A stretch of DNA of 64,000 nucleotides. Source: Chlorokybus atmophyticus (lineage: Eukaryota > Plantae > Mesostigma and Chlorokybus algae). How positions within the stretch are numbered: the stretch's first letter is position 1; every line of letters starts with the position of its first letter. A program made the translations under genes and the position numbers. The stretch spans positions 17,860-81,859 of the forward strand of contig RHPI01000160.1 of assembly GCA_009103225.1 (NCBI GenBank), written 5' to 3'. Below are positions 30,201-50,113 of this stretch, piece by piece. The notes beneath the pieces were generated by a model. It had not been told where the DNA came from, ran no database searches, and saw only the letters and a list, made by a program, of their open reading frames with translations.

Positions 30201-31334
30201 TATCGCTTCTTGCACAGGCGAAATGAGAGTATGATTGAAGAGTTGTCGAAACCACAGCCCGGGCTGGAGTTTGTGAAGTTTGACAAGATGTTCGCCAGGC
30301 CATTCTCAGAACAGCTGCTGGCGAACTTGTGGAAGCAGCACATAACGTACTGGCGCTCACCGGAGTACAATGCCGTGCGGCTGGGCATGACCGTCCTCAT
30401 CGGGCTCTTCTTTGGCACAACCTTTTGGAAGAAGGGCAACGATCGGAGCACCCAACAGGATGTCATGAACATTGCTGGCGGTGTGTATCTTGTCGTGCTG
30501 TGCCTCGGAATCCAGAATGCCTCGATTGTACAGCCCGTTGTGGCAGTGGAGAGAGGAGTGTTCTACCGCGAGCGCGCTGCGGGTTACTACTCAGCTGTGC
30601 CTTATGCTCTCGGTCAACTGTTGATTGAAATCCCCTACATTCTGGTTCAGACTGCCACCTACGCTGTCATCACGTATGCCATGGTCCAGTTCTCATGGGA
30701 TGCAGCCGTGTTCCTTTGGTAAGCGTCGGTGACAAATGTGATCATGATTCCTGCATGAAGTCACCCTGCAAGCATTCGAAGCTGACAACTCGATGGTTGC
30801 TTATATGGCAGGTACTTCTTCTTCATGTTTCTGACGCTTTCCTGCTTTACATACTATGGCATGTCTTGCGCGGTGCTTACTCCTAGCGTGCAGCTGGCAG
30901 CCGTTGTTTCTACCTTCTTTTACTCCTTCTGGTGCGTGTGCAACCTGGTAGCCATAGGTCTTGGGTCTCTTGGGCCTTGCTTACCAACTAATGTTTCCAC
31001 ATGTTGTTGACCGCTGTGTGGCATGAACAGGAATCTATTCGCTGGCTTTGTTGTCTCTCGCAATAACATGCCTGGGTGGTGGAAATGGTACTCCTATTGC
31101 AATCCTTTGGCATGGACGCTTGATGGGTTGATCAGCAGCCAACTGGGGAATGACAACACCATGATCAGCCTGGCTGACGCGGGTGAAGAGCCTATCAGCA
31201 AGTACATCAACGATTATTTCGGGTTCAGCTACTCCTTCCTCGGCCAAACGGCAGCGATTCTCATTGGGTTTGTTGTTGTCTTTGCCATGGTTGTTGTACT
31301 TGGCATCAAGTTTCTGAACTACCAGAGGCGTTAG
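24238..31334 (+). CDS. ABCG: Full-size ABCG (pleiotropic drug resistance, PDR-type) transporter, about 21 exons
   Basis: NBD-TMD-NBD-TMD order. IEIPKVEVR; Walker A GPPGAGKT (~25011); [11 protein letters not shown] (~25950); DEISTGLD; [23 protein letters not shown]; GMILPF; Walker A GVSGAGKT (~28952); [41 protein letters not shown]; NPATWMLE; YWRSPEYN; VFYRERAAG; C-terminus KFLNYQRR* as in plant PDRs. I saw no stops in the exons read. The first exon (ATG 24238) is tentative. Confidence 0.95.
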
Positions 31335-31969: not shown

Positions 31970-34040
31970 TAACTGCACAACAGCCGTATGAGCTCAGCGC
32001 TTGCAAGCAGCCTTGATGACAAGAAAGAGCAATCGGAGTACAGCAAACACAAGACGTGGACGTGCCCGCGCTCTAGGGAGGGAGGCCTCCCGTCTCCCCT
32101 TATCCCTCCTCTCTCCTCCCTTCTCTCTCCTGCCTCCTCAGTGGTTGTAGCGTAGGTTTGGCGTGCTGCGTCAGCGTCAGGGTCCTTGTCCCGCGCGTAA
32201 GGGCTGGCCCGCATGCAGGCTGGGGGCTGTGCAGCCAGATGTTGGCCAAGAACTATCACCTCGGAAGAGAACCCTCCCAAGGGACGTGCGCTAGGGCGGT
32301 AACGGCAGCACGCACAGCTGCACAGATGCACGTGTTGAGCACCCTCCCCTGCAGATGCTCACGCGGTGTCACTGTCTCAAGAATGCACCACTGCACATGG
32401 TACACAAGGTACAGTTGCGGGTTCGCATGAAGGCTGCGCATGCGCGCGGCTAATGTCGACACGAACAAGCGGCGTGTTGTCTCCGTAGGGCTTCTTGCAA
32501 AAACGGCAGCGGCACTTTGTTGCGCCCTCGCAGAAAGACGCTAGCGGCATGTAGCCACCATAAGCTGTCCCTCTGGTGGCAACACCCTTGGCCTGGATGT
32601 CAGCGTCGCCCGGATGCCGGTCTTGATGATGAAAGTGACACAGCACGCACGTGTTCGCAGTACCCTGCAAGAAGCGAGAGGGCACGATTAGCAGGTCTGC
32701 TAATCGTGCCCTCTCGCTTCTTGCAGGGTACTGAGTGTTGTTGGCGCCGGCGTCGCTGATGGCAATGAGTTGTGCAGCTTCCAGTAATGCTGCGTAATGC
32801 ATGTTTGTGCCGCTGGTGGAGCCTGCCCCGTGCCAGCTCAGCAGCGGTGATGACATCCTGCGCTCTCCACCATGCAGAATGCTGGCTGGCTGTTGGTGGC
32901 GTTGTGGATGACAACGAGTTTTGCAGCGCTAAGCTGCACAGTGCATGTGTGTGCCAGGTCGTCAGTGGCAGTGATATCCTGCCCTCCCCGCGTGCAGGGT
33001 GTTGGCTGTCGTTGGCGCTGTGGACGGTGATGAGTGCGCAGCTATGAGCTGCACGCTTTATGCCGTGCTCCAGCGGTGGTCGTGCGCGGTGCGTACAGCT
33101 GCATTCAGTTAGGGTGGGTGTGGGGTGCGCGCTCCTGGGCAAGCGTGCATGGATAGCCGCTGCGCATGCAACGCGACACAGCCCATGCGACAACGTGGTT
33201 GGCATGCACGTGACCTCCACGCATGTGCACGCATTTTCAGACATGATACAACAAAAGAGACTGGACCAAAGAACACTTGGCTTGAATGCTATGCCATCAC
33301 AGCATCGCTTGCTGAGCTGAGCCTGGGCTACAGCCAAGCGACAGGCGGTGTGGAAGAGGTGGCTGCCCTGCCTCTGAGCGTAGAGGGCCCTGCAGGCTCG
33401 CCTTTGTGTGCACGTATGTGTTGTTGGTGCATTGGACAAGTGCGGACTGGGTGACCAGCCGCTGAGCAGTGCCGTCGAGGTAGAGGCTGGTAATTTTGGT
33501 GGCATCCGTGGAACAGCTGCAGCGGACGGGAAAACCAGCAGCACTAAGCCGGCGGAGCAGTGCCGCTGAGAGAGAGATTGTCGACCATGGCAAAAGCCAC
33601 CCTGCAATAGTTCAGCAGCAAGCATGACTGACCGGCAACCATCACACAACAAAAAAAACAATCAATCAACAACCAACTAGCAATAACACCCATAACAAGC
33701 AACATCAACGTGACTGATGGCAAACGCATGCAGCGAGATTAAGCAACCACAACCACGGTTAAGCACCACATCTACTTTAACAACATCCTCAACAATAACA
33801 AAACCACAACTTGCAATGACCACAATCTGCCAACAACCACAACCCATCAACAACAACAACAAGCAGCGACAAACCCAATGTAACGACACAATGGCTACTA
33901 CACCCAACGCAACTAGCATGCAGGCACCTGCAGGCACAACAGCAAACACCACAAAGCGGTCTGTCATGATGTAAACACGATGTACATACCACAGTTGCAC
34001 ATCCCCGCGTCGTGCGCCGCGGATCATATGGTCTTAACAA
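31970..34040 (-). other. Possible uncharacterised multi-exon gene or gene relic
   Basis: Splice-bounded segments translate as WLLPWSTISLSAALLRRLSAAGFPVRCSCSTDATKITSLYLDG (~33400-33600) and Cys-rich TCVLCHFHHQD...CEGATKCRCRFCKKPYGD (~32420-32670). I recognise no family and did not resolve the exon chain. Confidence 0.3.
32658..32733. repeat. Perfect 76-bp palindrome (37-bp arms, 2-nt loop)
   Basis: CAGTACCCTGCAAGAAGCGAGAGGGCACGATTAGCAG-GT-CTGCTAATCGTGCCCTCTCGCTTCTTGCAGGGTACTG. Confidence 0.95.
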
Positions 34041-34658: not shown

Positions 34659-35871
34659 GAGGGGCTCTCTTCGTTGAGAGCCACAAGTTGCTGAGAGTCT
34701 CAGCCTAAGACGCCTGTGCATAGTCATACATGTTGTAATGTGGTTATGCAGGAGTTGATAGATGTGCTCTTACCTTCTTGCGTGCTTAACGTGCCGAAGC
34801 ATGTGTATGAGACATCGCCAAGGTTTGACGTTGTTCATCAGCAGCACATCGTGCAGCATATTAACAGCAATATTCTCTACTAGCTCCTTAGCTGCATTTG
34901 CTTTCGTGGCTTTGGCAGCCCGTTTCTTGGTCCCTTACTCCTTGGCCGCCTTGTCATTGGCGGCCTTGTCCTTGTCGTCCTCATCGCCATCAGCATTCTC
35001 CTCATCCTCCTTATTCTTCTCATCAGCGCTTCGTAACTTAAGTTTGTCATGCCTGTCGCCCGGGCATGCCAGTCGTCATCGGGCATGCCTACAGCGAGAC
35101 CCTCGCCCGGCTTACCAGCATGGCGACCCGCGCGTGTCTCTGACCAGTAGCTAGGTCATGTCTCTAGAGTAGCTCATGACTATAGCCTACATAGGCACCG
35201 CGCGTAGGTGTTCAATTGTGTGTTCAGTTATAAGTCGGGTTCTATATCGAGTGGGGATTTCCTATGGAAATAGCCTCGATATGACCATTAGCTTATGTTC
35301 TGGACAGTCATGAGTTGACTTGTATAAGTAGGCACAGTGTTCACCGGATCAGCTGGAAACACTGGAAGTGAGAAAGCTAAGAGCTTGTGAAGCGACTTGA
35401 ACTACGAAACACGCCGTCCCGGTTCCCAAGAATCCCCTCATCGTGTGAGAGCCTGTGCATGTTCTTGTGCAGCCTGTGCTTGTCTTTGCTGTGAGCTTTG
35501 TGTACTTGGTCGCGGTGTGCTTGTTGGCATCAGTCAGGGCATAGCATCCACGTGTTGCTTGCTCATTCACCTCACTTAACAGTGCAATTTCTCTTCCACT
35601 CATGCAAAGAACTGTGTAAACAGCACTACCTACAGTAGTGGCTCGTTGACTTACAGTGTCACCCTCTTTGCTCAAGTGAGTGTAGTTGCAGGCTGCACAT
35701 CAGCAGCGCAATCTGTAGTTGTACACATCGCAGTGCATCATTGTCACCGTCATTGCATAGCGCGCACAAGTGCTAGTGTGTTGGGTGATAGCAGCATTGG
35801 AGATCCCTTGTAGAGCATTGTAGAGCACAAAGACTCTACCTTTCATCCACTTTCACCATCGCATCAGCTGT

Positions 35872-37605
35872 ATGAGCAGGCCCACCCCTTTCTCGCCAAT
35901 AGAAGAAGGGAACCTCAACAGCTGGAGCCCGGCCTCCAACCTTACCTACGAGTGCGCAAGTGAAAGGAGCGGTTACCGTAGCAGCAGAGGCTCACGCCCG
36001 TCTCCGGCTTGACCTCCTCTCACTCCACTCCTCGACAACGAGCATCTCCACCACCGTCGGACAGCGACGACGAGGAGATGAAGCCTTCCAGCTCAACCAA
36101 CTCCCTACGCTTCTCCGGACGCCCTGGCACCACCTCACTTGACGAGTTCAACATCAATTTCCACTCCAAGATGCGGCAGCAAGCCCTCAAGAGCCTGGAC
36201 AAATGAGGTATCGTTTCATGTGTCCGCTCAATACCTTGATCACGAAGCACATGATGTGTGGAAGTCCGTCGCTGAGTTGCACAAAATTGATGGCTATAGC
36301 GAGTTGGCCAGCACAATAGCCTCCACGTCACTGCGTAGCCCATCGGTTACTGTCCCTATAGCAGCGGCCCCGCCAGCCTCAGTCACGGGTCTCACTCTAG
36401 CTGCAGCTATGGAGAAGGCAGAGAATGAAGAAGTTGAGGTGGTAGTGGCCTCATTGACTCCTGCAGAGATCGAAAGCAAGAAGGCCGAGCGCCGGATCAG
36501 GATACTCAACTGCATCGCTGCCATCATCAGGGAGCAACAAGAGGAGCAGCAAGCTGCAGCGTTGGAGGTGGGTACGCCCCTGCTACCAACACCGAACTCG
36601 CGTGCTCCAGCGGGAGGCAGTGTTTTCACCCTCGGCTCAGTGGCATTGCGTGCACCCGCGCTTACGGTGGGCGCGGCCATATTGGACTCCCCGTTGAAGG
36701 ACCTCTACGCCGCACTCCGGCGCACCTTCCCACCTCAAACCAACAGCAAGGTGGAGGAGTTGAGGCGTTTTCGACGGAAGCCCAACGAGGACCCTCTCCG
36801 ACTGTATTCACGGTTGGAAGGGGTGCTTAAAGACACTGACTACAAGATCGTTAGTGAGGAGGCGGCAGCAGTGGTGTATGTGGCCGAGATGAATCCCACC
36901 CTGAGTGAGTCAACGCGCCTGACGCTGAACTACAGCAGGCCCCTCGGCTACACCCTCAAGGAAGCTTTCGAGACTGCACAAGCCATCCACAAGCGCGCAG
37001 TGTATGAGAAGGCGATGCTGGACACCAACCGTAGTGCCTCGCGGCCTATGGCAGGCACAAGTGCAAAGCCTCTTCGGCGGGACCGCGGCCGAGAGCCGCA
37101 AGGTATCCACAACATGGATAAACGGTCAGCTCATGCTGCCCTTGTGGCCCCAGTGCTGTGCCACCGGTGTGGTCGACATGGCCATTACCAAAAGGAGTGC
37201 ACCGAAGATTACGGCAACCTTGGGTGCGACTATTGCCACAAAACGGGACACTTGGAGACAGTTTGCTGGCTCAAGTTCCCTGAGCTGCGGCCTTCTATTG
37301 GCTACAACAATAGCAACAACGCTGTTGGCTACCGCGGCAACAACAACAACAACAACAACAACGGGGGCTACAACAACAGCAACCACGCTAGCGGCTACCA
37401 CAACAGCAACATCGCTGGTGGTCGCAACAATGGCAACAACGCTGGTGGCCACAACCCCAACAACAACAACAACGCTGGGGCCCGCAAGGAAGAAGCTGGC
37501 TATAGAGGGAAAAACCGCCCTCCACAGCACAAAAGACCTGAGGGACGTCCTCGCGCTGGAGCTGCTGCTGTAAAGACACCAGCCAATCCACCAACTATTG
37601 ACTGA
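35872..37605 (+). pseudogene. gag: Gypsy gag with two CCHC zinc knuckles and an Asn/Gly-rich tail
   Basis: CHRCGRHGHYQKEC and CDYCHKTGHLETVC; gag-like LRRFRRKPNEDPLRLYSRLEGVL. Early stop and frameshift near 36200; candidate ATG at 35872. Confidence 0.85.
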
Positions 37606-39989
37606 GTGGCAGCCCTGATGGCGCGCGTGGCACAGCTGGAGGAGAACAAGGAGCAGGATTATCAAGCCTACTACGCTGCTAGGTGGGCACTGATGGCACC
37701 AAAACGGGATAGGGACACTCCCATGCCGTTACGCGTGCAACCATCAAGACGTGCGCGCAGAGAAGCTGGCGCGTCGTCAACAGCGGCATCGTCGGACGCC
37801 ACAAGTGGTCCTCGGCAGCCACAACCACTGCTGGGACGACGCCGTCGACGACACCGTCGGCGTCCAATTCCGACCGCGACAGCAGGTGTCAGCACTCTGG
37901 GCACCACGCTGTCCCTGGTGATGGAAAGCACCCACGCCGCAACAACCATGGTCGTTGGGTTCGAGGGTGGTGAATCCACCACTCCTGCCTCCATCGAAGC
38001 GACCACATCGGCCGCAACTGCTGCCACCCTCACAGCCGCCACCTCAGTAACGACGACTGCTGCAGGTGCCACCACCATCGCCTCCAGTAGTGCTGCCGCA
38101 CCCACTGCACCACTCCCTGAGATTCGAACGGCACCGCCACCAGCACTTGACGTCACACAGCAAGTGCCACGCGGACCACAAGCAGAACGCGCCTGGGCGT
38201 CGGTGGTTCTACGCAACGTGGAGCCCACCACCATTGCGTACGGACCAGGGGGGCGACGCACCACGTGCGTGGCACGCGATGATCGCATCTTGCCCCTTCC
38301 ACCTCCAGAGTACCACACGCTGCCGGAACCCACACAACAGCAGCTGGAGGATGAAATCCTCGCCGGCACTGCACCAGATGAGGGATCGTCTCTTCGGGGT
38401 CACCTACCGGCGACCTGCCGCGTTGGAGCTGGCCATTCAGTTGTTCTTGGCATTACACGCACGATTGCAGGGCGCACCCAGTCAAACGCGGCAACCCATG
38501 CCCGCTCAACAAATCGACTTCGAGCCCTCGCCACTGGACCCACTCGGACTCCAGCGCCACAAAATACAAGACCTCGTGGTCACCATGTCAAACATCGCGC
38601 TGGGCGCTGATCTCGCTCTCCGGGGGCTCACTCCAGGCAGTCGTCAAGAGCGTTTCTCTGCCCTCGAACAGGCACAAGGTTATTAGGTGGACCAAGCTGT
38701 CCAAGTGGACGCACGCCAACAGGCATACGAAGCAGCACACGCCATTATTGTCCCAACCGTAGCTCCGGTAAATGTTGCCAGCGCCTCCACGGCGCTGACC
38801 ACAGGGTACTCCACGGCAGTCGCCATCGAACAGGCAGGACAAGCAACTGTTGCAGACCAAGCGAGGGCGTTGGCACAACAATTGAGGGGGGTAATCGCCC
38901 CGCTGCTGCCTCCTTTGGTCGAAGACATGCCCGAGGATCAATGCGATGCAGGGCGAGGGTACCTCACCCCGCAAGGGGACACCACACAACGAGGAGGAGC
39001 TGGTGTGGTGGGGGAGCAACAACTCCGTACCGCACTCATCCGGCAAGCAGTCATGTTGCACAGGTCTGAGGGCAACACATTAAGACAGATTATGGGGATG
39101 CAAGAGGGCAGCGCCGCTCGAGCCCGTCTCGTGACATGGCTCGTTGCCAATCACCCTGCTGTCCCCCTGTTTGCCTTTGACAACCGAGCATCATGGTTGG
39201 GGGCATTCGTTCGCTCGCTGCGACAAGCATACGACGAGGCTGCCACCACAGCCCCGGACACGCTGGAGGGAGTGCAAGAGGCAATGCTGCGGCTGCCAGG
39301 GGTGGAAGCCGCACGACAATGGCGGCGCATCGCCATTGCTCATGAGCTACACGCACAGCAGACTGACCTCCAGCGCACCCTACGCGCGCGCGCCATGACC
39401 GTGCTCGACGTGGGAGTGGTACAAGGAAGGTGGGATGCCCGCATGGCAGGGATCTTGCGCGTCCCCACCATCACCCACGACATGCGGCGACAGCTACCAC
39501 GCGCCGTATACCTGCAGCCCATGCCTCAATATCATCATTGGACCGACACGGACACCGAGCCCACGGCCACGCGGGAAGGGACGTTGGTCAGAGAAGCGGC
39601 TCATGCTGTCCGATGGACGTACGCCGCGGAACAAGCTGAACGTGAGGCAGGCCCACAAACACCGGGTCCGCCGGGGTTTCTACCACAGCCATTGGGTACA
39701 CCCGCGGGCATGATTCCATCTTCGCAGAGGCGGCATCCACCGGCGCCGCCACCACAACCGGCGCCGGAACCTCCAGCACCGAGCCCCCCCCGTGTTTACC
39801 AACCACCACGACAAGGTCGATTCGGCAGAGGGAGAGGGCAAGGAGGGGGTTCTTCGGACTCAGCAGGCAGAGGAGCTCTGGCTGCCATGCGCTCAGCACC
39901 CCCAGCTGAGAGAACTGAGGCGAAGGCGCAGACAGCTCGTATGAAGAGGCTGCGTATCGACGCCAATGCTGCCATAGTGGCAAACCAAG

Positions 39990-40380
39990 GCAAGCACGTT
40001 ACCATCAACGGCCTGGCACCCAAGCGAGTAATGTTGGACACCGGAGCACAGCCTGTCATCATCGGGCGCTTCCTCGCGCGGTCCCTCGGCATAACCAGCT
40101 CCAACTTGGTGCCTTGCCCATACGTGTTGGACACTGCCACAGGTAGCCGAGATAAGGTGATGGGAGTCACCAGGGAGGCCTTTTGCATTCGGTTGACAGG
40201 GCTGGACCCAACCCACACAACCGAGATCGTCTAGCAATGTGTGGTCACCAATGCCGGCTCCTTCGACTTTCTGCTTGGGCAGGACTTCAACTTCCCTGTG
40301 GGCATGGGCCTCGACTGCTGGACAGATCGAGCGTGGTTTCGGCCACATTGGGATGAGGATAACGGAGAGGTGCAGGTTTT
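39990..40380 (+). pseudogene. Gypsy aspartic protease (in-frame TAG at 40232-40234)
   Basis: VMLDTGAQPVIIG catalytic motif, then FDFLLGQDF in the same frame after the stop. Confidence 0.85.
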
Positions 40381-40701
40381 CTGCCTCTCGAGTAAGTCTC
40401 GCGCACGCGCGCCCAACGCAAAGTGGCTGCCGTGGCTACACGCAGCCACGCCCGCACACGGGAGGCTGCAACGGCCACATACGATGGCGCTCGGACGCAA
40501 GTCGCTGCGGGTGCCACGGCCCCGTGTCGAACCGTCGACTCCTCTCCCACCCCGTACAACGAGGAGCAGGAGGATGCCACCGTGGAAGTAGCATTACAAG
40601 ACCCAGCTGAACGACGCTGGCGCGCACAGGTGGATGCACACGTCTTGCTCAGCCATCCACTGATCACCACGCGCTTCCCCAACTACTGAAGCCACGACAA
40701 G

Positions 40702-42003
40702 GTGCAGGACCACCATATGGTGGCCACCGGCGTGGTGGAGTTCCACACATTTCGCAGACAACAGGGCATCACAGTGTTGGAGCTATTCGGAGGCATTGGC
40801 AGCGGTCTTGCCGCGGTCCTCAACACGGGTGTGAAGGTGGTCAAATACTATTACTGTGACCCAGACCCACACGCGCAAACGGTCCTCAAGCACCACCTAC
40901 GCCAATTGCACGAAAGGTATTCACATCAACTACCCCTGTCGGCGTTACAAGGTAGCCTCAAAGCCTTGCCACAAGACATCCGGCTGATCATTAAAGATCA
41001 CCTACTGTCCCTCGGCAACGTCGACCTATTGATAGCTGGATGGGAATGCCAAGGGCTCTCCAGGGTAGGCAAGGGGCAAGACCTCGAAAACTCTCGCTCC
41101 GGGTTGTTCTGGGAGCTGATGAGAATCATCCACCTCCTTCAACACCACCAGATCTCCAGACCCCTGGGGTATGTTATCGAAAATGTGCATTCAGAGGACG
41201 ACAAGCGTCCGCACGTGGCCTCCAGCTACCGACAAGTTTGCTCCATTCTGCGGCACCCACTCAAGGTGAACGCGGCACGACATGGCTCGCGCGCACATCG
41301 TGTACGTGCCAAGTGGACAAACTTGGCCACCGTGAAAGAGCTCATGACCGCAGAATACACGCGCAGCGCTCGGCCACGCAACCTGTTGGTCGATGACATC
41401 CTTGACCCCGGCCGCACAGCACAACCTGTCCTGCGTCATGACCACCACCACTTCTACCCGTGCAATCAGCCCGGGCAGCCCCGTCGCGCACTCCCCACAT
41501 TGGTGTCCTACTCGGGCTCCTACGCATTTCGGAACGGTGGTGACGGGATGGTGTTCGATGCGACCACCAACAGGCTGGAAGAACCCAACGCACGCGAACG
41601 TGAACGCGGCATGGGATTCTTCCCCAACATCATCACGGGTTCATCGCTGACAGATAGTCAGCAATGCCAGATGCTTGGTCGCGCCATGGACCAGAATAGC
41701 ATGGTATGGCTGCTGGAGCTGAGCTTCGCATTGCAGGACCGCCACGTGTCCTTCGAGGATCTCGAACACTTGGCTGGGGGGTGGGCTGATCGCGTAGCCG
41801 ACACCAAGGCAGCTCACACAGCCCTCGAGGTGGTCCACATGGAGGAGCAAGCAGCAGTGACAGTGGAGGACATTCCCGTGGTTGCCAATGCAACCTCCTG
41901 GGACCATGCCATTGGCCCGTTGGCCACAGAAGACACTCGAGAGAAGCTGGAGGCTTCCCTCAACAAATGGAGGAGCCAATTCAGCTTCAGTATGAAGGAA
42001 TAG
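40702..42003 (+). CDS. Retrotransposon-encoded C5-cytosine DNA methyltransferase domain (open frame, GTG-start call in ORF track; part of the pol polyprotein)
   Basis: Motif I VLELFGGIGSG, motif IV DLLIAGWECQGLS (catalytic Cys, with EC instead of the usual PC), motif VI YVIENV, motif VIII HRVRAKWTN, motif IX EPNARERERGMGF, motif X LGRAMD, in canonical order. It runs directly into the RT N-terminus. Confidence 0.9.
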   Translation: MQDHHMVATGVVEFHTFRRQQGITVLELFGGIGSGLAAVLNTGVKVVKYYYCDPDPHAQTVLKHHLRQLHERYSHQLPLSALQGSLKALPQDIRLIIKDHLLSLGNVDLLIAGWECQGLSRVGKGQDLENSRSGLFWELMRIIHLLQHHQISRPLGYVIENVHSEDDKRPHVASSYRQVCSILRHPLKVNAARHGSRAHRVRAKWTNLATVKELMTAEYTRSARPRNLLVDDILDPGRTAQPVLRHDHHHFYPCNQPGQPRRALPTLVSYSGSYAFRNGGDGMVFDATTNRLEEPNARERERGMGFFPNIITGSSLTDSQQCQMLGRAMDQNSMVWLLELSFALQDRHVSFEDLEHLAGGWADRVADTKAAHTALEVVHMEEQAAVTVEDIPVVANATSWDHAIGPLATEDTREKLEASLNKWRSQFSFSMKE

Positions 42004-42268
42004 GGTACATGCTCAGTGTACCAGATGGACATCGAACTGGTGGACACTGAGCCGGTGTTTCGACGGCAATACAGGCTCTCTAAGTTGGAAGAGGACTTGG
42101 TGGAACAAAGATGTAAGGCGCTGCTTGATGCAGGCCTTATCGAAGAGTCCACATCGGACTTCGCAGCAGCAACCGTCATGCCACAAGAAGGATTCAGCAG
42201 GCAATTGGAAAGAACGACGCATGTGTGGCGACTATCGCCCCCTCAACAACAAGACCAAGCAAGACAGG

Positions 42269-42692
42269 TGTTGAGAGAATTCGTACATACGATCAGCATC
42301 GACCCTCCACACAGGAGTAGAAGGTCGTAAGGACGAGCACTAGGTCCGGACTTAGCAAGATGGCATCGTCGGACCAGACTCCGGACTCCAGACTGGCGCC
42401 TTACTAACTGCTTTGTATCTCCGCGTATACTTACTCATATTGGGCGTGTAAGAGCTTGTTGGAAAGCTCTGGTTGTAAGGAAGACAACAAAGCTTAGAGC
42501 GCGTCAAAAGGCTGGGTATAGCTTACGCAGTGCTTGCAAACGTAGACGTGTGTGTAACCGGCTGGTATAAGAACCAGCGGACAACTTGTAATAGATGAAT
42601 GTGATGTGACTTGTGTATGCTCTGGTGGCGGTAGCTCTGTCCGTGTGTATCCATGCTTGCCTCAGCTACATGTGCATGCTAGTCCTTCAACA
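42269..42692 (+). repeat. Copia 5' LTR (424 bp)
   Basis: TGTTGAGAG...CTTCAACA. I found only 2 differences from the 3' LTR. Confidence 0.97.
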
Positions 42693-42704
42693 GGTTATGG
42701 GCCC
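42693..42704 (+). promoter_or_regulatory. Copia primer-binding site GGTTATGGGCCC
   Basis: Immediately follows the 5' LTR and matches the PBS type of Drosophila copia, which primes with an internal fragment of initiator tRNA-Met (from recall). Confidence 0.8.
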
Positions 42705-42819
42705 ACACTACGCTTGAGGAGTGTGAGACTAGCTTGTGTGCATAGTAGTTCTACACTACGGTAGCTTGTTGGTAGCAGAGCCTTGGGTGTCAACTGCAAG
42801 AAAGGCAGGCTCGACAGAA

Positions 42820-45800
42820 ATGGAGGCGACCTACGACAAGGGGCAGATTGCAAAGCTGGACACCGACAACTACAACACATGGTGCGTGGAGATGAAGGCC
42901 TTGCTCATCCACAAGAAGGTGTGGAAGTACGTTGATCCGAAGGCACCACCACCAACACCAGGAGCGAACACTGTGTGGTCAGAGCATTCAGCAGAAGCAC
43001 ACTCTTTGCTTGTGTTGAACAGCAAACCGCATCACTTTCCCATGCTCACTGCATGTGAAGATGGTAGACAAGCTTGGGAAAAGCTATCAGCCGTTTTCAG
43101 AGCCAAGAACAATGCCAGAAAGTTGCATCTACGCAAGCAGCTCAGCGCACTCAGGAAGGAGGCAGCAGAACCCATCACAAAGTATGTTGCGCGCGCGAGA
43201 GAGCTGTGGGCGGACCTCATCAACGTCGGCCACAACATGGGGGAGACGGAGGTAGTGCTGGCCATTGTTGCAGGGCTACCAGCAGAGTACGAGGTCGTCG
43301 CAACCCTGCTGGAGACGTCATCATCGGAGTTGACGTTGGACGATGTGCTACCGAAGCTGCTCACCGTGGAGCAGAGGGTTGTGAAGAAGGACGAGCAAGC
43401 GGATGCCGTCGCCTTCTACACCGGCAAGCACGCAAAGAAGAGCAACCATGAAGAGAAGTACAAGGGCAACAAGCCAGGCAATCCTCGTCACAAAGACCTC
43501 ACATGCCACTGGTGTGGTTGGAAGGGGCACATTGTGAAGGACTGTAGGAAGAAACAACAGGGGCAACCTAGAGCAAGCACCAGCAACAGCGGCAACGAGC
43601 ACCAACACAAGGAGAAACATGTCGCCTTCACTGCATCCAGTTCGAGGGCGGGCACAGCTTTCTGGGTGGTGGACTCTGGCTGCGATCGTCATCTCACACC
43701 AAACAAGGAGGTGATGGAGGGCTACAGGAAGCTGACGTCCACAATCAAGGTGGCGGGCTTCGGTGGCGAAGTACTGGTGGCTGAGGGAGTTGGCAACGTA
43801 CGACTCCAGTGCAAGGTTGGTAACACACTACGCGAGGTGTTGTTACGCAACGTCCTGCATGTTCCTAAGGCTATTGCGAGTCTATTCTCTGTGAGGGTTG
43901 CGGAGCGCTTAGGCGCGGAGATCCTATTTCGGAAGGGTGGCTGCTCAGTCATCCTTGATGGGGTCGTGCACATGGTTGGAATCGCTGATCCGGGAGGGCT
44001 CTACCACGTGGAGCAGCCTCAAGACAGAGACATTCAAGCCATGGTGGTGAAGGACAAGGAGTCGCCAACATTGTGGCATCGAAGGTTCGGGCATCTCAGC
44101 TACGTCAACCTCACTCGCCTTGTCGCTGAGAAGATGGTCAAGGGCATCCATCTCAGCACAGAAGAACTCAAGACAGCATCAGGTGCACTTTGTGAACCAT
44201 GCCTGGTTGCAAAGCAGCATGCTATGCCATTCCCATCATCCTCTTCTAGCAGTCAGCATCCTTGCGAGCTTGTGCACATGGATGTCTGTGGCCCTATGCG
44301 CATTGTGGCGAAGGGAGGGGCCAGGTACTTTGCTACGTTCCTCGACGACTACAGCAAGCTGTCCATCATCTTTCCATTGACGCTCAAGTCAGAAGTTGCT
44401 GGAGCTGTGCGCACAGTCGTGGCCTTGTTGGAGACGCAGTCTGGCAACAAGATGAAGGCAATGAGGAGTGATCGAGGAGGGGAGTACATCAACAAGGAGT
44501 TGAAGGAGTTCTTCGCCAGCAAGGGCATACGCCACGAGACAACGGCACCCTACACCCCGCAGCAGAATGGAGCAGCTGAACGCCTCAACAGGACACTCTT
44601 GGAGCGTGTTCGAGCCATGCTCAACGACACAAAGATGGAAGACAGTTTGTGGAAGGAGGCGGTACTCACTGCCAACTACATCCGCAACAGGTCTCCGGTG
44701 AGCTCAGAGCAGAAGACTCCGTGGGAGCACTTCTATGGAGCCACACCAGATGTGAGTGGTATGCGTGTGTTTGGATGCACGGCATATGCACTAGTGCCTA
44801 AACAGCTCAGGCACAAGCTGGAGCCGGTCAGCAAGAAGGGCATCTTCGTTGGCTATGAACCGGGTTCCAAGGCTTACAGGATCTTGCTCGAGGACACTCA
44901 AAAGATCATTGTGAGCAGAGAGGTGGTTTTCCACGAGGGATTATCACAACCAGAAGCAGACTTCTTTCCTAAAGATGAAGCACAGCCGGAGCATCCTGAA
45001 ACAGTGGAGGCTACAGGCAAGGCCATCATCGATGATAAGGGTGAGCAGGACTCTACTGTAGCAGACAAACAGTCGCACCTGCAGCAGGAGCACGCAGCTC
45101 GGAGATACCCAGTGAGGGAGAGAAAGGCACCTGACTTCTTACACAAGGCACACGTCGCCAGTGTGCAGAATGAGGAGCCAAGCACCTACGAGGAGGCATT
45201 GTTAGCACCAGATGCGGAGCAATGGCAGCGTGCTATGGACGAGGAGATTGCGTCACTCCATGCCAAGAACACTTGGTCACTGGAGCAGTTACCGCAAGGA
45301 GTGAAGACCATTCCAGTGAAATGGGTCTTCAAGGTGAAGCGTGATGGTCAGGGCAACATTGAGCGCTACAAGGCAAGACTGGTGGCAAAGGGCTTCTTGC
45401 AGCAGGAAGGTGTGGACTTCAACGAAGTGTTTGCACCTGCAAGTAAGCATACCACCTTCCGTGCACTGCTAGCTGTGGTTGCTGCTGAGGACCTCAAGCT
45501 GCATCACCTGGATGTGAAGACTGCCTTCCTCTACGGAGAGCTGGAGGAGGAGATCTTCATCGAGCAACCACCTGGATATGAAGAAGGGGAGAGAGGCACA
45601 GCGTGCAAGCTGATCAATGCACTGTACGGGCTGCGACAGGCACCGCGTATGTGGCATATCAAGCTCACCAAGGAGCTGGAGGCACTTGGCTTCATCGCAT
45701 CCTCTGCAGACCCTGGGCTCTTCATCCATGCAGACAACAAGGTCTGGCTGCTCGTGTATGTGGATGATATAATCATCACCGCCAGGCAGGTGCACCACCT

Positions 45801-46707
45801 GCAGGAGACGAAACTTGCTCTACAGCAAGCATTCTCAGTTCGTGATCTTGGAGAGGCCAAGTGGTTCCTTGGCATGGTGATTGAGCGCGACAGGACTGCT
45901 CGCACAATCAAGATCAGTCAGAAGCATATGGTGAGAAGACTCGGCACCAAGTTTGGGCTCACTGAAGCGAAGACCAAGACCACACCGTTGGCACTTGGCA
46001 CTGCCCTCATCAAGGCAAAGGATGAGGAGGTACTCAATAAGGCTTAGTATCCATATGGTGAGCTGGTAGGCAGCATGCTCTATCTGGCAGTGTGCACACG
46101 TCCCGATGTTGCACATGCTGTGGGAGTACTTGCTCGCTACATGTCTGCACCGAGCATGGAGCACTGGAGAGCAGCAAAGGGAGTACTACGCTATGTTGCT
46201 GGGAGCGCAACAGTTGGCATCAAGTTTGGGAGCGGGAGCACTGAGTTGGAGGGCTACTGCGACTCGGACTTTGCTGGTGACCTCAACAGCAGGAGGTCCA
46301 CTACAGGCTACGTCTTCAAGCTGAACGGAGGCGTGGTGAGCTGGAACAGCAGGCTGCAGCCAACAACAGCAGCATCTACATCAGAGGCTGAGTACATGGC
46401 AGCGGCAGCAGCAGTAAAGGAGGCACTCTGGCTTCGCAAGCTCATGGCAGACTTGGAGCACCCCATGGCGTGCATCGTCATCAACTGTGACAACCAAGGA
46501 GCCATCAAGTTGTTGAAGCACCCTATCGCCTCGGCAAGGACGAAGCACATTGATGTCATGCATCACTTTGTGCGTGACAGAGTCACAAGGAAGGAGGTGG
46601 AGTTTCAATACTGCAACACCGAGGGCATGCTGGCGGACTTCATGACAAAGCCATTGTCACCACTCAAGTTCAAGACTTGTTGTGCAGGACTTGGCATCTG
46701 TGTTTGA
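42820..46707 (+). CDS. Copia gag-pol polyprotein with one in-frame TAG (46045-46047)
   Basis: DNYNTW gag start, CHWCGWKGHIVKDC knuckle, WVVDSGC protease, LWHRRFGH..CEPC, integrase HMDVCG / RSDRGGEY / NGAAERLNR, RT YKARLVAKG / LDVKTAFL / YVDDII, RNase H YCDSDFAGD / EAEY / CDNQGAI. ORFs 42736-46047 and 46075-46707 share one frame. Confidence 0.95.
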
Positions 46708-46749
46708 CTACAGGAGCAAGCGTTGGAGGTCAAGCTGCTCCCGTGGGAG

Positions 46750-47173
46750 TGTTGAGAGTATTCGTACATACGATCAGCATCGACCCTCCACACAGGAGTA
46801 GAAGGTCGTAAGGACGAGCACTAGGTCCGGACTTAGCAAGATGGCATCGTCGGACCAGACTCCGGACTCCAGACTGGCGCCTTACTAACTGCTTCGTATC
46901 TCCGCGTATACTTACTCATATTGGGCGTGTAAGAGCTTGTTGGAAAGCTCTGGTTGTAAGGAAGACAACAAAGCTTAGAGCGCGTCAAAAGGCTGGGTAT
47001 AGCTTACGCAGTGCTTGCAAACGTAGACGTGTGTGTAACCGGCTGGTATAAGAACCAGCGGACAACTTGTAATAGATGAATGTGATGTGACTTGTGTATG
47101 CTCTGGTGGCGGTAGCTCTGTCCGTGTGTATCCATGCTTGCCTCAGCTACATGTGCATGCTAGTCCTTCAACA
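46750..47173 (+). repeat. Copia 3' LTR (424 bp)
   Basis: Preceded by a short purine tract GTGGGAG; near-identical to the 5' LTR. Confidence 0.97.
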
Positions 47174-47548
47174 ACAGGTACCCCATGCCTACAGCAGAGG
47201 GTATCTTCGATGATGTGGGAGACTGCACCGTCTTCAGCATCTGGACATGCGTCAAGGGTACAACCAAATCGCCATCAAGGACGAGGACAAGCACAAGACC
47301 TCCTTCTGGGGCAACCGACAGTTGTACTAATGGAAGGTAATGCCGTTCGGGCTGAAGAATGCCCCCGCCAAGTTTCAACACGTAATGGACAAGGCCTTGA
47401 AGGGGCTGGACTGCGCGCGGTGCTACATCGATGACATCCTCATCTTCAGCCGCAGCAACGAGGAGCATCTTCAGCACATCGAAGCGGTGCTGGAATGACT
47501 CAAGGGAGTGGGGATGACCGTACACCCCGACAAGTGTACCTTCTTCAC

Positions 47549-47885
47549 CCACAAGGTGCCATACTTAGGGCACATGATTATGCCCCATGGTGTGTATGTG
47601 CAGCAGGCAAAAGTAGAGGCTCTGGCAGCTATCCCTGCCCCGACAGACCTCACACGTCTGCGCGCTTTCTTGGGACTTGCCAACTACTATCGTCGCTTCG
47701 CGAAGTCCTTCACGAACCGGCGATAGTAGTTGGCAAGTCCCAAGAAAGCGCGCAGACGTGTGAGGTCTGTCGGGGCAGGGATAGCTGCCAGAGCCTCTAC
47801 TTTTGCCTGCTGCACATACACACCATGGGGCATAATCATGTGCCCTAAGTATGGCACCTTGTGGTTCGTGAAGGACTTCGCGAAG
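47549..47885. repeat. Foldback inverted duplication inside the Gypsy RT
   Basis: 47549-47692 is the reverse complement of 47721-47864 (144 bp), and 47696-47716 of 47865-47885. The ORF track shows the same peptide HKVPYLGHMIMP...LANYYRRF on both strands. Confidence 0.95.
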
Positions 47886-48271
47886 ATTGCAAGGCCCCTC
47901 AACGAGCTACTGAAGAAGGAGGTGGAGTTCGCGTGGAAGGAGCCGCAACAGCAGGCCTTCGAGGAGCTGAAGAGCAGGCTCACCACCACTCCCATCCTTC
48001 AACGTCCGGACTACGCCAAGCCTTTCATCCTTCACACCGACTGGAGCAAGCTGGGGATGGGAGCGGTGCTGGTGTAGCACGATGAGAACAGGGGGGGGGG
48101 GAGAAGGAGCGGGTGGTGTCNGCCAGCCGAAGCATCAACAGCGCCGAGGCCAACCACAGCAGCTACAAAGGGGAGTGCCTCGCTGCAGTGTGGGCCATCT
48201 CCTTCTTCCGACCTTTCCTCTTTGGTCGACAGTTCCAACTGATCACCGATCATTAGCCCCTCAAGTGGCTG

Positions 48272-50113
48272 ATGACCAACCAACATCTGACAGGGAAACT
48301 TGCTCAATGGGCCCTGCTGTTGCAGGAATACGACCTCGAGATCGACCACCGTGCTGGCCTCACCAACCAAGACGCCGATGGCCTCAGTCGCAACCCTCAC
48401 CTCAGCACCAACGACGCAACTGGAGCGCGGCATGAGCTCGTCCCTGCAGCAACAACCCCCACCATGGCAGCCATCTTTGCTGCTGCCGCGTTGCGCTCAG
48501 GGCGCAAGACCAACACCACGGCCTCAGCAGTGGCAAAGGAGATCCCTGCCCTTGATTCTACCGGCCCTACGGCAACCACACCCTTGGGAGACGCCCACGC
48601 AGCCGACATTGACGTCGATGACACAGAGCTGGCGCCCACAGACACCAGGCAGGACATATGGCAGGACAAGCCATCACTCTCCTTTCTTCAAAGTGGCCAG
48701 CTTCCCTCTGGCATGAGCGCCCGAGAGAAGGACCGAGTCAACCAACGCACCCGTCACTATCGATGGGCAGGTGACAAGCTGTATTGCCGCTTCCACGACG
48801 AAGACAAGGAAGTGCCGACACCGGGCACACGCGAGGGCATCATCACTTCCCTCCACACTGAGCTTGGACACTTCGGTGTCAAGCGTATAGTCAGCCTAGT
48901 GAGGGCACAATATTGGTGGTATGGGTTAACAAAACAGGTGCAGGGGTTCGTCAGCCACCAGCAGTGTGACATGGTGCGCGCCAGCCTCAACACGCATAGC
49001 GCCACCTTGCACCCACTCCCCATCTCCGGTCTCTTTTACCGATGGGGACTCGACATCTTGGGGGACTTGGCACCCTCAGCGCGCGGCAACCGGTACATCC
49101 TGGCCATAATCGAGCACTTCTCCAAATGGGTGGAGCTGGTACCATTACCCGACAAGAGCAGCAGGGGGGTGTCTCAAGCCTTCCTCTCTCACGTTCTCAG
49201 CCGATTTGGCAGCTGCGCCGAGGTCATCACTGACCAAGGTACTGAGTTCAGAGGGGAATTCGACACCCTCTTGGACAAATGTTACATCGACCACCGCCGT
49301 ACCTCGCGTGATCACCCTCAAGCCGACGGCCTCGCCGAGCGTACAGTACAGACCATCAAGAAGGCACTTCGCAAATACGTGCTGGAGTTTGAGAAGAACA
49401 CTTGGGATGACCACCTCCCGTGGGTGGCCCTTGGATATCGACTGTCAAAGCAGGCGGCTCTGCGGGAGTACAGCCCGTACTACCTGGTTTTCGGGCGACC
49501 ACCATTGCTCCCCTTCCGTGCGCAGCAGGAGGTGGATCGCGTCGTGAACAACCTCGACGACCCTGACTGGGTGCACCACGACATCACCACACGCGCCGCG
49601 CTTTTCGAGCGCGCCGTCCCCATGGCCTTCAACAACCTGCGCATCGCGCAGCATCGCGACACGCTGCGCTACGAGCGCGTACGCAGCGGCTTCTACAAGG
49701 AGCGCCAACGACGGTTCCAAGTAGGGGATTTTGCCTATCGCATGGCAGCCACCAAAGACACGCTTGACACCTCCGTAGGCCGCACCGTCTACAAGGTACT
49801 CAAAGTGTACCCCACAGGGGTGCTGGACCTCCTTGGTAAAAACGGAGAGAGGTTGAAGGACAACATGGTGAACTGTGCGCCATGTCACCTTCCTTACGTA
49901 GCCGGCTTCGGGCGTATCCAGCACCCTCTTCCCGCGCGCAGCACACGCTGTGAACGCTGCGGCAGCGCCAGCGACGACGCACTCATGATGCTCTGCAATG
50001 GCTGCAACACGGGCATGCATTGCTACTGCCTGGAGCCACCTTTGGATGCGATACCTATGGAGGAGTATTGGTGCGACGATTGCCGTACCAACGGCCCTCC
50101 TCACTTGCGCTAG
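48272..50113 (+). CDS. Gypsy RNase H end plus integrase with C-terminal PHD finger
   Basis: QEYDLEIDHRAGLTNQDADGLSR; partly degenerate HHCC (LHTELGHFG...HQQC); DDE core WGLDILG / ITDQGTEF / GLAERTVQTIK; C4HC3 PHD CERC...LCNGCNTGMHCYCLEPPL..IP.EEYWCDDC. Confidence 0.92.
   Translation: MTNQHLTGKLAQWALLLQEYDLEIDHRAGLTNQDADGLSRNPHLSTNDATGARHELVPAATTPTMAAIFAAAALRSGRKTNTTASAVAKEIPALDSTGPTATTPLGDAHAADIDVDDTELAPTDTRQDIWQDKPSLSFLQSGQLPSGMSAREKDRVNQRTRHYRWAGDKLYCRFHDEDKEVPTPGTREGIITSLHTELGHFGVKRIVSLVRAQYWWYGLTKQVQGFVSHQQCDMVRASLNTHSATLHPLPISGLFYRWGLDILGDLAPSARGNRYILAIIEHFSKWVELVPLPDKSSRGVSQAFLSHVLSRFGSCAEVITDQGTEFRGEFDTLLDKCYIDHRRTSRDHPQADGLAERTVQTIKKALRKYVLEFEKNTWDDHLPWVALGYRLSKQAALREYSPYYLVFGRPPLLPFRAQQEVDRVVNNLDDPDWVHHDITTRAALFERAVPMAFNNLRIAQHRDTLRYERVRSGFYKERQRRFQVGDFAYRMAATKDTLDTSVGRTVYKVLKVYPTGVLDLLGKNGERLKDNMVNCAPCHLPYVAGFGRIQHPLPARSTRCERCGSASDDALMMLCNGCNTGMHCYCLEPPLDAIPMEEYWCDDCRTNGPPHLR

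What the first reader, a model, noticed from the sequence alone, without database searches (positions are those of the whole stretch)
40702..42003. Ty3/Gypsy retrotransposon encoding its own C5 DNA methyltransferase within pol
Seen: all main C5-MTase motifs in one open 433-codon frame between protease and RT, with a WECQ variant of the catalytic PCQ motif; this domain is stop-free while flanking domains are not. Established: DNMT-carrying retrotransposons were reported in charophytes and dinoflagellates (de Mendoza et al. 2018), with de novo CG activity shown for some, so the class is not new. Inference: the enzyme is packaged with RT and could methylate new cDNA or target sites. The EC catalytic loop and the possibly preserved frame deserve study.
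Basis: partly seen in the sequence, partly recalled or inferred. Interest (0 to 1): 0.85.

Follow-up and report, generated by a model that had tools for sequence, protein, structure and literature searches.

The report
Dead Gypsy retrotransposon carrying DNMT3-like methyltransferase
This is a broken copy of a known kind of green-alga jumping gene that carries its own DNA-methylating enzyme, and its odd catalytic motif (Glu-Cys instead of Pro-Cys) is the usual, conserved state of that large enzyme family rather than damage in this copy.

Summary
Positions 40702-42003 (+) are one open 433-codon frame with a C5 cytosine methyltransferase domain (Pfam PF00145, E 2e-9). All motifs are present, and motif IV reads WECQ. 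By sequence and by predicted fold it is DNMT3-like. It lies in frame between the protease and the reverse transcriptase of a Ty3/Gypsy element (gag, PR, DNMT, RT, RNase H, integrase-PHD; about 36.1-50.1 kb).

This copy is dead. It has in-frame stops, frameshifts, an inverted duplication, and a young Copia element inserted in its RT.

The open DNMT frame is not evidence of preservation. It is only the fourth-longest open stretch of the element. The domain also carries 7 substitutions at 51 family-conserved columns, where the median family member has 2.

The class is published as Gypsy-DNMT3 (de Mendoza 2018).

What is new here:
- Among 231 relatives, Glu-Cys is the majority motif (142, against 73 with Pro-Cys), while the other catalytic residues are 98-99% conserved.
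- Four intact elements keep the Glu codon although their synonymous sites are saturated.
- The family also occurs in chlorophytes and a liverwort.
- It has two architectures that match the two main branches of the DNMT tree.

No enzymatic activity has been shown for any Gypsy-borne DNMT. Other notes of this scan cover this same stretch and related copies elsewhere in this genome.

The parts
36082..37602 (+). gag-like open frame with two CCHC zinc knuckles (about 37159-37206); ends at an in-frame stop at 37603
   Evidence: Pfam zf-CCHC hit; translation; weak tblastn match to the gag of L001
37606..39925 (+). about 2.3 kb of Ala/Thr/Pro/Arg-rich coding-like sequence between gag and protease with no family hit; the frame shifts between 38610 and 38687; relatives have only about 0.75 kb here
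   Evidence: spacing in relatives
39926..40405 (+). aspartic protease (LDTGAQ active site), broken by an in-frame stop at 40232
   Evidence: Pfam Asp_protease_2; tblastn with the PR-DNMT protein of L001; stop map
40406..40701 (+). PR-DNMT linker holding a frameshift (frame 2 to frame 1; some other copies differ by one letter at 40374) and an in-frame stop at 40687
40702..42003 (+). the reported 433-codon ORF: a short linker, the DNMT3-like domain (about 40759-41736), then linker and the first residues of the RT region (from about 41872); it ends at an in-frame TAG at 42001-42003
41038..41055 (+). motif IV GWECQG; the Glu codon GAA at 41044-41046 stands where Pro is usual, and the catalytic Cys is at 41047-41049
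   Evidence: family distribution
42004..42268 (+). N-terminal part of the Gypsy RT, with a frameshift at about 42184 (most contigs of other copies carry two more letters there)
42269..47173 (+). nested young Ty1/Copia element: 424-nt LTRs (42269-42692 and 46750-47173; 99.5% identical over the 425-nt match, which includes one flanking base), 5-bp target duplication ACAGG (42264-42268 and 47174-47178), polyprotein open except for one in-frame stop at 46045; not part of the Gypsy element
   Evidence: contigs of other copies run straight across the empty site
47179..48089 (+). rest of the Gypsy RT: frameshift near 47214-47298 and an inverted duplication (arms 47539-47705 and 47708-47874, 96% complementary)
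48065..48430 (+). RNase H domain; frameshift near 48075 and one N at 48121
48272..50113 (+). 613-codon open frame: integrase (H2C2 zinc domain about 48827-48958, DDE core about 49040-49315) with a C-terminal PHD finger (about 49949-50083)
   Evidence: Pfam; 50% identity to the integrase-PHD protein of L001

Best explanation
The stretch is the methyltransferase domain of one decayed copy of a multicopy Ty3/Gypsy retrotransposon of the published Gypsy-DNMT3 kind, sitting in a green-lineage nuclear genome. In working relatives a single gag-pol polyprotein carries, in order, zinc-knuckle gag, aspartic protease, a DNMT3-like cytosine-5 methyltransferase, RT, RNase H and integrase, often ending in a PHD finger. 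The enzyme is therefore made together with the replication machinery.

Inferred mechanism: it is a working SAM-dependent cytosine-5 DNA methyltransferase that travels with RT and integrase and methylates the element's new DNA copy or DNA at the integration site, while the PHD finger reads histone tails. I put enzymatic activity of the family at about 0.6, and the cDNA or target-site idea at about 0.4.

The Glu-Cys motif IV is not a lesion. It is the family's majority state and is kept under purifying selection.

This particular copy does nothing. It is cut by stops, frameshifts, a rearrangement and a Copia insertion. Its DNMT frame is open by chance and already carries missense damage. The confidence given (0.85) is for the identity, the dead state of this copy and the family-level constraint, not for the inferred mechanism.
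For: Identity. Pfam PF00145 hit. The closest solved proteins are DNMT3C/3A/3B (E 7e-9 with the single sequence). With a family profile, DNMT3A scores 7e-25, DRM 5e-12 and HhaI 3e-9. The AlphaFold model has pLDDT 84.9, and its top 50 Foldseek hits are all DNMT3 methyltransferase domains, TM up to 0.81.

Part of the element. The reading path PR to DNMT to RT to RH to INT-PHD matches locus L001. L006-L009 encode the same order, without a PHD hit, as single uninterrupted ORFs of 2188-2374 aa.

Multicopy. 154 and 307 contigs from two sequencing runs lie on 38600-42400 at 85-99% likeness. They cross the Copia site without the insertion.

Dead copy. Stops at 37603, 40232, 40687 and 42001; frameshifts near 38650, 40374, 42184, 47250 and 48075; an inverted duplication; the Copia insertion. 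Seven of 51 conserved columns are mutated against a median of 2 in the family, and six of the seven are C>T or G>A.

Constraint in the family. Of 231 members, 142 have EC and 73 have PC. The Cys is kept in 228/231, the ENV Glu in 231/232, and the two Arg of RxR in 227 and 226 of 230. In the four intact EC elements synonymous sites are saturated (pS 0.73-0.83), while dN is 0.185 for the DNMT, 0.112 for RT and 0.279 for gag. The GAA Glu codon is unchanged although neighbouring codons differ synonymously.
Against: No Gypsy-borne DNMT has been shown to methylate DNA. The Klebsormidium enzyme gave no signal in yeast, which the authors called inconclusive. The Pro of the Pro-Cys motif is nearly universal in characterised C5 methyltransferases, so Glu-Cys enzymes might bind DNA without methylating it or might act on another substrate. 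The catalytic loop is the low-confidence part of the model (residues 105-112). I could not read other copies from this genome as sequences, so the Glu in the active progenitor of this family is inferred from relatives. No terminal repeats or target duplication of the Gypsy element were found, so its ends are only approximate. I found no RNA run, so expression is unknown.
Confidence: 0.85

Rival explanations
1. The DNMT open frame at this locus is kept by selection, either as a domesticated host gene or as a trans-acting supplier of methyltransferase, while the rest of the element decays.
For: It is stop-free for 433 codons inside an element with many lesions. All catalytic motif residues are still readable.
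Against: Three other stretches of the element are open for as long or longer. The frame has no ATG at its start; it opens four codons after a stop and starts with GTG. Seven of 51 family-conserved columns are mutated, worse than 91% of family members. Listed differences from other copies are 4 synonymous to 5 non-synonymous in the DNMT, much as on the protease side. No RNA holder was found.
Confidence: 0.04
2. Across the family the Glu-Cys domain is not a methyltransferase. It would be a catalytically silent, DNMT3L-like DNA- or chromatin-binding module, or an enzyme with another substrate or chemistry.
For: The Pro of motif IV is replaced in 61% of members. The only Gypsy-borne DNMT tested gave no methylation in yeast. 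Pfam recognises only part of the domain in many members.
Against: Every other catalytic residue is kept at 98-99%, including the nucleophilic Cys, the ENV Glu and the RxR arginines. A purely binding module would be expected to lose them, as DNMT3L did (general knowledge). Glu and Pro forms interchange repeatedly on the tree without loss of the other motifs. From memory, not checked here: Pro-to-Ala or Pro-to-Ser mutants of M.EcoRII keep reduced activity.
Confidence: 0.3
3. The methyltransferase is a host DNMT3 exon that merely lies next to retrotransposon fragments, so the element does not encode it.
For: No LTRs or target duplication define the Gypsy element in this window.
Against: The protease, DNMT and RT frames join at the places where other copies differ by indels. 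More than 100 relatives carry the domain inside one pol protein with RT and integrase. Four are single ORFs of about 7 kb. Pfam shows no PWWP or ADD domains of host DNMT3.
Confidence: 0.01

Closest known systems
KnitGypsy-Dnmt3 of Klebsormidium nitens (de Mendoza et al. 2018, Nat Commun 9:1341, PMC5890265); called 'streptophyte Gypsy-DNMT3' in bioRxiv 10.64898/2026.05.21.726589
   Same: An intronless DNMT3-like domain with unrearranged motif order lies inside the pol ORF of a Ty3/Gypsy retrotransposon. The family is multicopy. The DNMT domain is under purifying selection: the paper reports Ka/Ks below 0.2, and here dN is 0.185 against saturated dS in intact relatives.
   Different: I had no Klebsormidium sequence to compare, so direct kinship is untested. 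I did not find three things described in either paper: the Glu-Cys motif IV as the majority state; the presence of the family in chlorophytes (Monoraphidium, Scenedesmus) and in a liverwort assembly (Calypogeia); and two positions of the domain in pol (PR-DNMT-RT versus RT-RH-DNMT-INT). The paper's legend notes DIRS-like split repeats; none could be found around this decayed copy.
Mammalian DNMT3A/3B/3C catalytic domains (for example PDB 6u8p, 6f57, 8tci)
   Same: They are the best sequence and fold matches. Motifs I, IV, VI, VIII, IX and X are in the same order, with the catalytic Cys, ENV, RxR and a GR-type motif X.
   Different: Identity is only 21-23%. There are no PWWP or ADD reader domains. 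Motif IV reads W-E-C-Q where DNMT3A reads S-P-C-N. The region between motifs VIII and IX is about 40 residues longer. The domain is embedded in a retrotransposon polyprotein.
SymbioDIRS-Dnmt3 and SymbioLINE-Dnmt of Symbiodinium (same 2018 paper)
   Same: Both are retrotransposon-borne cytosine methyltransferases. The DIRS-borne enzymes are the only ones with demonstrated de novo CG methylation.
   Different: The retrotransposon classes differ (tyrosine-recombinase DIRS and LINE), the host lineage differs, and the paper describes independent acquisition.

Membership tests
C5 cytosine DNA methyltransferase (Pfam PF00145) | Profile score above the curated cutoff | tested here: met
   37.8 bits against a cutoff of 22, E 2e-9
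C5 cytosine DNA methyltransferase (Pfam PF00145) | Motif I FxGxG (SAM binding), motif VI ENV, motif VIII RxR, and motifs IX and X in canonical order | tested here: met
   LFGGIGSG, IENV, SRAHRVR, RERERGMGF and LGRAMD at the coordinates; aligned to DNMT3
C5 cytosine DNA methyltransferase (Pfam PF00145) | Motif IV Pro-Cys dipeptide with the nucleophilic Cys | tested here: inconclusive
   The Cys is present but the Pro is replaced by Glu (GWECQG). The same replacement occurs in 142 of 231 relatives. The effect on catalysis is unknown.
C5 cytosine DNA methyltransferase (Pfam PF00145) | Methyltransferase fold | tested here: met
   AlphaFold model pLDDT 84.9, pTM 0.87; Foldseek probability 1.00 to DNMT3 catalytic domains, TM up to 0.81 by target length
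C5 cytosine DNA methyltransferase (Pfam PF00145) | Transfers a methyl group to C5 of cytosine in DNA | not testable with these tools
   Needs an enzyme assay. The only related test in the literature was negative and inconclusive.
DNMT3 subfamily | Closer to DNMT3 than to DRM, DNMT1, DNMT2 or bacterial enzymes | tested here: met
   Family profile against PDB sequences: DNMT3A 7e-25, DRM 5e-12, HhaI 3e-9, DNMT2 6e-8. A tree with canonical DNMT3 sequences was not built because none were available by reference.
DNMT3 subfamily | N-terminal PWWP and/or ADD reader domains of host DNMT3 | tested here: not met
   No such Pfam hits in the ORF or in its neighbours. This fits a captured catalytic domain, not a host gene.
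Gypsy-DNMT3 retrotransposons | DNMT3-like domain in frame within the pol of a Ty3/Gypsy element (PR, RT, RNase H, DDE integrase in that order) | tested here: met
   Reading path mapped with L001 proteins. Intact single-ORF relatives L006-L009. In this copy the path is broken by lesions.
Gypsy-DNMT3 retrotransposons | Multicopy, dispersed family | tested here: met
   154 and 307 contigs at 85-99% likeness in two runs; the site is empty of Copia in other copies
Gypsy-DNMT3 retrotransposons | Terminal repeats (LTRs or the split direct repeats noted in 2018) and a target-site duplication | tested here: inconclusive
   No repeat pair brackets 36.1-50.1 kb. The only match beyond shuffles (31 nt at 34944 and 50926) is low-complexity sequence. 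The copy is old, so absence proves little.
Gypsy-DNMT3 retrotransposons | Common descent with the Klebsormidium elements | not testable with these tools
   No Klebsormidium sequence was returned by any search

The most novel reading that the evidence does not exclude
Glu-Cys, not Pro-Cys, is the working catalytic dipeptide of most members of a very large, green-lineage-wide family of retrotransposon-borne DNMT3-like enzymes. These enzymes would be active cytosine methyltransferases, perhaps with altered substrate preference such as nascent cDNA or RNA:DNA hybrids. That would make them the first natural C5 DNA methyltransferases known to dispense with the near-universal motif IV proline, and it would explain why the element keeps the domain next to RT or next to integrase.
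Probability: 0.4. Interest if true: 0.6.

Novelty: new member of a known kind. Interest (0 to 1): 0.4.

Why it matters
The locus itself is an ordinary dead transposon copy. The family behind it matters more. Transposons that bring their own DNA methyltransferase invert the usual picture of methylation as host defence, and so far activity is proven only for dinoflagellate DIRS elements.

The domain occupies two different positions in pol. Most members carry a Glu-Cys catalytic loop that selection preserves.

This gives a direct experiment. Natural Glu-Cys and Pro-Cys sister enzymes can be compared to learn whether the 'invariant' proline is needed, and what these enzymes methylate.

Tried and rejected
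- Terminal repeats of the Gypsy element. I used exact-seed repeat search, blastn with word sizes 11 and 7, and local alignment against shuffles. Only the Copia LTRs and one 31-nt low-complexity match turned up. The split-repeat layout reported by earlier scan notes for other copies could not be confirmed or excluded here.
- Other copies inside the window: none (tblastn).
- Host identification. The Copia polyprotein search gave nothing above 49% identity, and run names are coded. Host exons (ABC-G transporter, chlorophyllase) show only a green-lineage nuclear genome.
- Klebsormidium sequences. Unnamed NCBI hits were looked up and come from other assemblies, so none was found.
- Motif IV state of other copies in this genome. 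The reads table lists only the 40 best-supported of 238 differences. None of those listed falls in 41044-41046, but this is not proof.
- CpG depletion as a sign of methylation: about 0.8 observed/expected everywhere in the window, so uninformative.
- Literature on natural non-proline motif IV variants: nothing relevant found.
- Selective preservation of this copy's DNMT frame: rejected.

Full report
**What is there.** Translating 40702-42003 (+) gives one frame of 433 codons ending in TAG; the frame is open from 40690. Pfam-A reports PF00145 (C-5 cytosine DNA methylase) at 37.8 bits, cutoff 22, E 2e-9. All the diagnostic motifs can be read, with coordinates:
- motif I, LFGGIGSG
- motif IV, GWECQG (Glu codon GAA at 41044-41046)
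- motif VI, IENV
- motif VIII, SRAHRVR
- motif IX, RERERGMGF
- motif X, LGRAMD

**What kind of methyltransferase.** With the single sequence, the best solved relatives are DNMT3C, 3A and 3B (E 7e-9 to 1e-7). DRM and HhaI lie near the threshold. A profile of 13 family members sharpens this: DNMT3A 7e-25, DRM 5e-12, HhaI 3e-9, DNMT2 6e-8. An AlphaFold model built on that alignment has mean pLDDT 84.9 and pTM 0.87. Only the loop just after motif IV is poorly defined. Its 50 best Foldseek matches in the PDB are all DNMT3 catalytic domains, with TM up to 0.81 by target length. The motif order is not rearranged as it is in DRM. No PWWP or ADD domain accompanies it. It is a bare DNMT3-like catalytic domain.

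**The surroundings.** The neighbouring frames carry the following:
- a CCHC zinc-knuckle gag (36082-37602)
- an aspartic protease (Pfam hit within 38687-40234)
- an integrase with an H2C2 zinc domain, a DDE core and a C-terminal PHD finger (48272-50113)

Mapping the proteins of a related metagenomic locus (L001) onto the window gives the reading path PR (39926-40405), DNMT (40762-41949), RT (41872-42268 and 47170-48089), RNase H (48065-48430) and integrase-PHD (48812-50086). This is a Ty3/Gypsy order with the methyltransferase between protease and RT.

Between 42269 and 47173 lies a separate Ty1/Copia element. It has 424-nt LTRs (99.5% identical) and a 5-bp target duplication, ACAGG. Its polyprotein is open except for one stop. 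It sits inside the Gypsy RT, and the RT reading frame resumes exactly after the duplication.

Elsewhere the window holds exons of an ABC-G type transporter and a chlorophyllase. The host is therefore a green-lineage nuclear genome. Its own proteins are not in the protein database used: the best Copia match is 49%.

**This copy is dead.** Along the reading path I find:
- in-frame stops at 37603, 40232, 40687 and 42001
- frame changes near 38650, 40374, 42184, 47250 and 48075
- a 167-nt inverted duplication inside RT
- the Copia insertion

Contigs of two public runs lie on 38600-42400 in large numbers (154 and 307) at 85-99% likeness, so the family is multicopy. Those contigs continue across 42268/42269 into the post-Copia RT sequence, so the Copia insertion is private to this copy. 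Most differ from the window by two letters at 42184, and some by one at 40374, which are the frameshift places. I only describe these differences.

**Is the DNMT frame preserved?** No.
- The DNMT frame (1.3 kb) is shorter than three other open stretches of the same element: 1.84, 1.55 and 1.52 kb.
- With about 11 lesions in the other 7.8 kb, a clean 1.3 kb is expected about one time in six (arithmetic).
- Among the best-supported differences between this copy and the contigs, 4 are synonymous and 5 non-synonymous in the DNMT frame. On the protease side the counts are 13 and 15.
- Against 231 relatives, the window's domain departs from the majority residue at 7 of 51 columns conserved at 85% or more. 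The median member departs at 2, and only 16 of 184 are as deviant.
- Six of those seven are C>T or G>A changes. In run X1 the window has T or A where the contigs have C or G at 83 places, against 53 the other way. This fits decay by deamination.

**The Glu-Cys loop is the family's normal state.** A search of 1.84 billion cluster representatives found 2401 relatives, 234 of them with E below 1e-30. Many are polyproteins of 1000-3400 residues. Together with the hits, 231 members could be aligned at motif IV:
- Glu-Cys in 142
- Pro-Cys in 73
- Ser-Cys in 5, Asp-Cys in 4, a few others

In the same set the Cys is kept in 228 of 231, the ENV Glu in 231 of 232, the two Arg of RxR in 227 and 226 of 230, and the motif IX Glu in 211 of 212.

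On a quick maximum-likelihood tree of 148 domains, built with the motif IV column left out, Glu and Pro are clustered: 17 changes against 41 for shuffled labels. Well-supported branches alone still force at least 6 to 9 changes, so the two states have interchanged repeatedly.

Four intact elements from metagenomes (L006-L009; single ORFs of 2188-2374 residues, all Glu-Cys) give a selection test. Synonymous sites are saturated (pS 0.73-0.83). Non-synonymous divergence by domain:

| Domain | dN |
|---|---|
| integrase | 0.091 |
| protease | 0.093 |
| RT | 0.112 |
| DNMT | 0.185 |
| gag | 0.279 |

All four keep the Glu codon GAA while the adjacent Gly and Cys codons differ synonymously. The domain, with its Glu, is under purifying selection in working elements. 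It is more constrained than gag and less than RT.

**Distribution and architecture.** Named members come from Closterium (zygnematophyte), Calypogeia fissa (liverwort), Monoraphidium neglectum and Scenedesmus (chlorophytes). Most of the rest come from metagenomes.

The DNMT tree splits, with SH-aLRT support 98, into two groups that coincide with two architectures:
- A group of 35, including the window, in which every informative member has PR-DNMT-RT-INT.
- A group of 113 in which every informative member (84) has RT-RNase H-DNMT-INT. Many of the full-length relatives with this order carry a PHD finger after the integrase, and the Monoraphidium protein also has a Tudor-like domain.

Both groups contain Glu-Cys and Pro-Cys forms.

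**What is known.** De Mendoza et al. 2018 (PMC5890265) described DNMT3-derived domains inside the pol of a Gypsy element in Klebsormidium nitens, with conserved key residues and Ka/Ks below 0.2. In their yeast assay only the dinoflagellate DIRS-borne enzymes methylated CG. The Klebsormidium Gypsy enzyme gave nothing, which the authors regarded as inconclusive. A 2026 preprint refers to 'streptophyte Gypsy-DNMT3' as an established class.

In full-text searches and in the 2018 paper's main text and supplement I found no description of a Glu-Cys motif IV, of chlorophyte members, or of the two positions in pol. This is absence in the library searched, not proof of absence.

**How it most likely works.**
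- Shown: the domain is translated as part of the gag-pol polyprotein in intact relatives and is conserved as an enzyme-like module.
- Inferred: it is an active cytosine-5 DNA methyltransferase (about 0.6) that travels with RT and integrase and marks the new DNA copy or its landing site (about 0.4), as the 2018 authors proposed. The PHD finger on the integrase would read histone tails for targeting.
- The Pro of motif IV is thought to shape the catalytic loop rather than take part in chemistry. From memory, not checked here, Pro-to-Ala or Pro-to-Ser mutants of M.EcoRII retain reduced activity. A working Glu-Cys enzyme is therefore plausible but unproven.
- The main rival, a silent DNMT3L-like binding module, is hard to square with 98-99% retention of every other catalytic residue.

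**Verdict.** The locus is a dead new member of a known class, and its open DNMT frame is open by chance. What deserves follow-up is the family-wide, selected Glu-Cys catalytic loop and the breadth and two-fold architecture of the family. Other notes of this scan cover this same stretch and describe related copies with split repeats elsewhere in this genome. I used them only as leads.

Noticed in passing
window 42269-47173: A young nested Ty1/Copia element with 424-nt LTRs (99.5% identical) and the target duplication ACAGG. Its polyprotein (1103 + 210 aa, same frame) is interrupted by a single in-frame stop at 46045-46047. The closest database proteins are only 49% identical.
   Followed up: partly
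window 47539-47874: An inverted duplication inside the Gypsy RT: 167-nt arms, 96% complementary, 2-nt spacer. The same RT peptide can be read on both strands. It is either a real rearrangement or an assembly artefact.
   Followed up: no
window 37606-39925: About 2.3 kb of mostly open, Ala/Thr/Pro/Arg-rich sequence lies between the gag zinc knuckles and the protease, with no Pfam hit. Relatives (L001, L006) have only about 0.75 kb there. It includes a CAACAA-type repeat block around 37305-37473.
   Followed up: no
L002 1-12144: A related Glu-Cys element sits on a 15.9-kb metagenome contig whose name ends in '_c'. The contig holds two head-to-tail copies 7.93-7.94 kb apart (96-100% identical). 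This could be a tandem array or an assembled circular form.
   Followed up: no
L001 7363-8029: Downstream of the integrase-PHD gene of this relative are two 118-nt direct repeats (99% identical) 549 nt apart. This is compatible with the split-repeat (A-B-A) ends that earlier scan notes and the 2018 figure legend describe. The 5' end of the element is off the contig.
   Followed up: no
P0209 (Monoraphidium neglectum MNEG_11595), residues 2260-2407: In this chlorophyte member the order is RT-RNase H-DNMT-integrase, followed by a PHD finger and a PTM/DIR17-like Tudor domain. That puts two histone-reader modules on one retrotransposon polyprotein.
   Followed up: partly
window 21538-22017 and 25622-30722: Host gene exons: a chlorophyllase (PF07224) and an ABC-G/PDR-type transporter (ABC_tran plus two ABC2_membrane hits), upstream of the element.
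   Followed up: no
window 32658-32733: A perfect 37-nt inverted repeat with a 2-nt spacer inside a 353-codon minus-strand ORF (32600-33661) that has no Pfam hit.
   Followed up: no
window 38600-42400 against runs X1 and X2: The window has T or A where contigs of other copies have C or G more often than the reverse (X1: 45 + 38 against 28 + 25). This fits deamination decay of a methylated old copy.
   Followed up: partly
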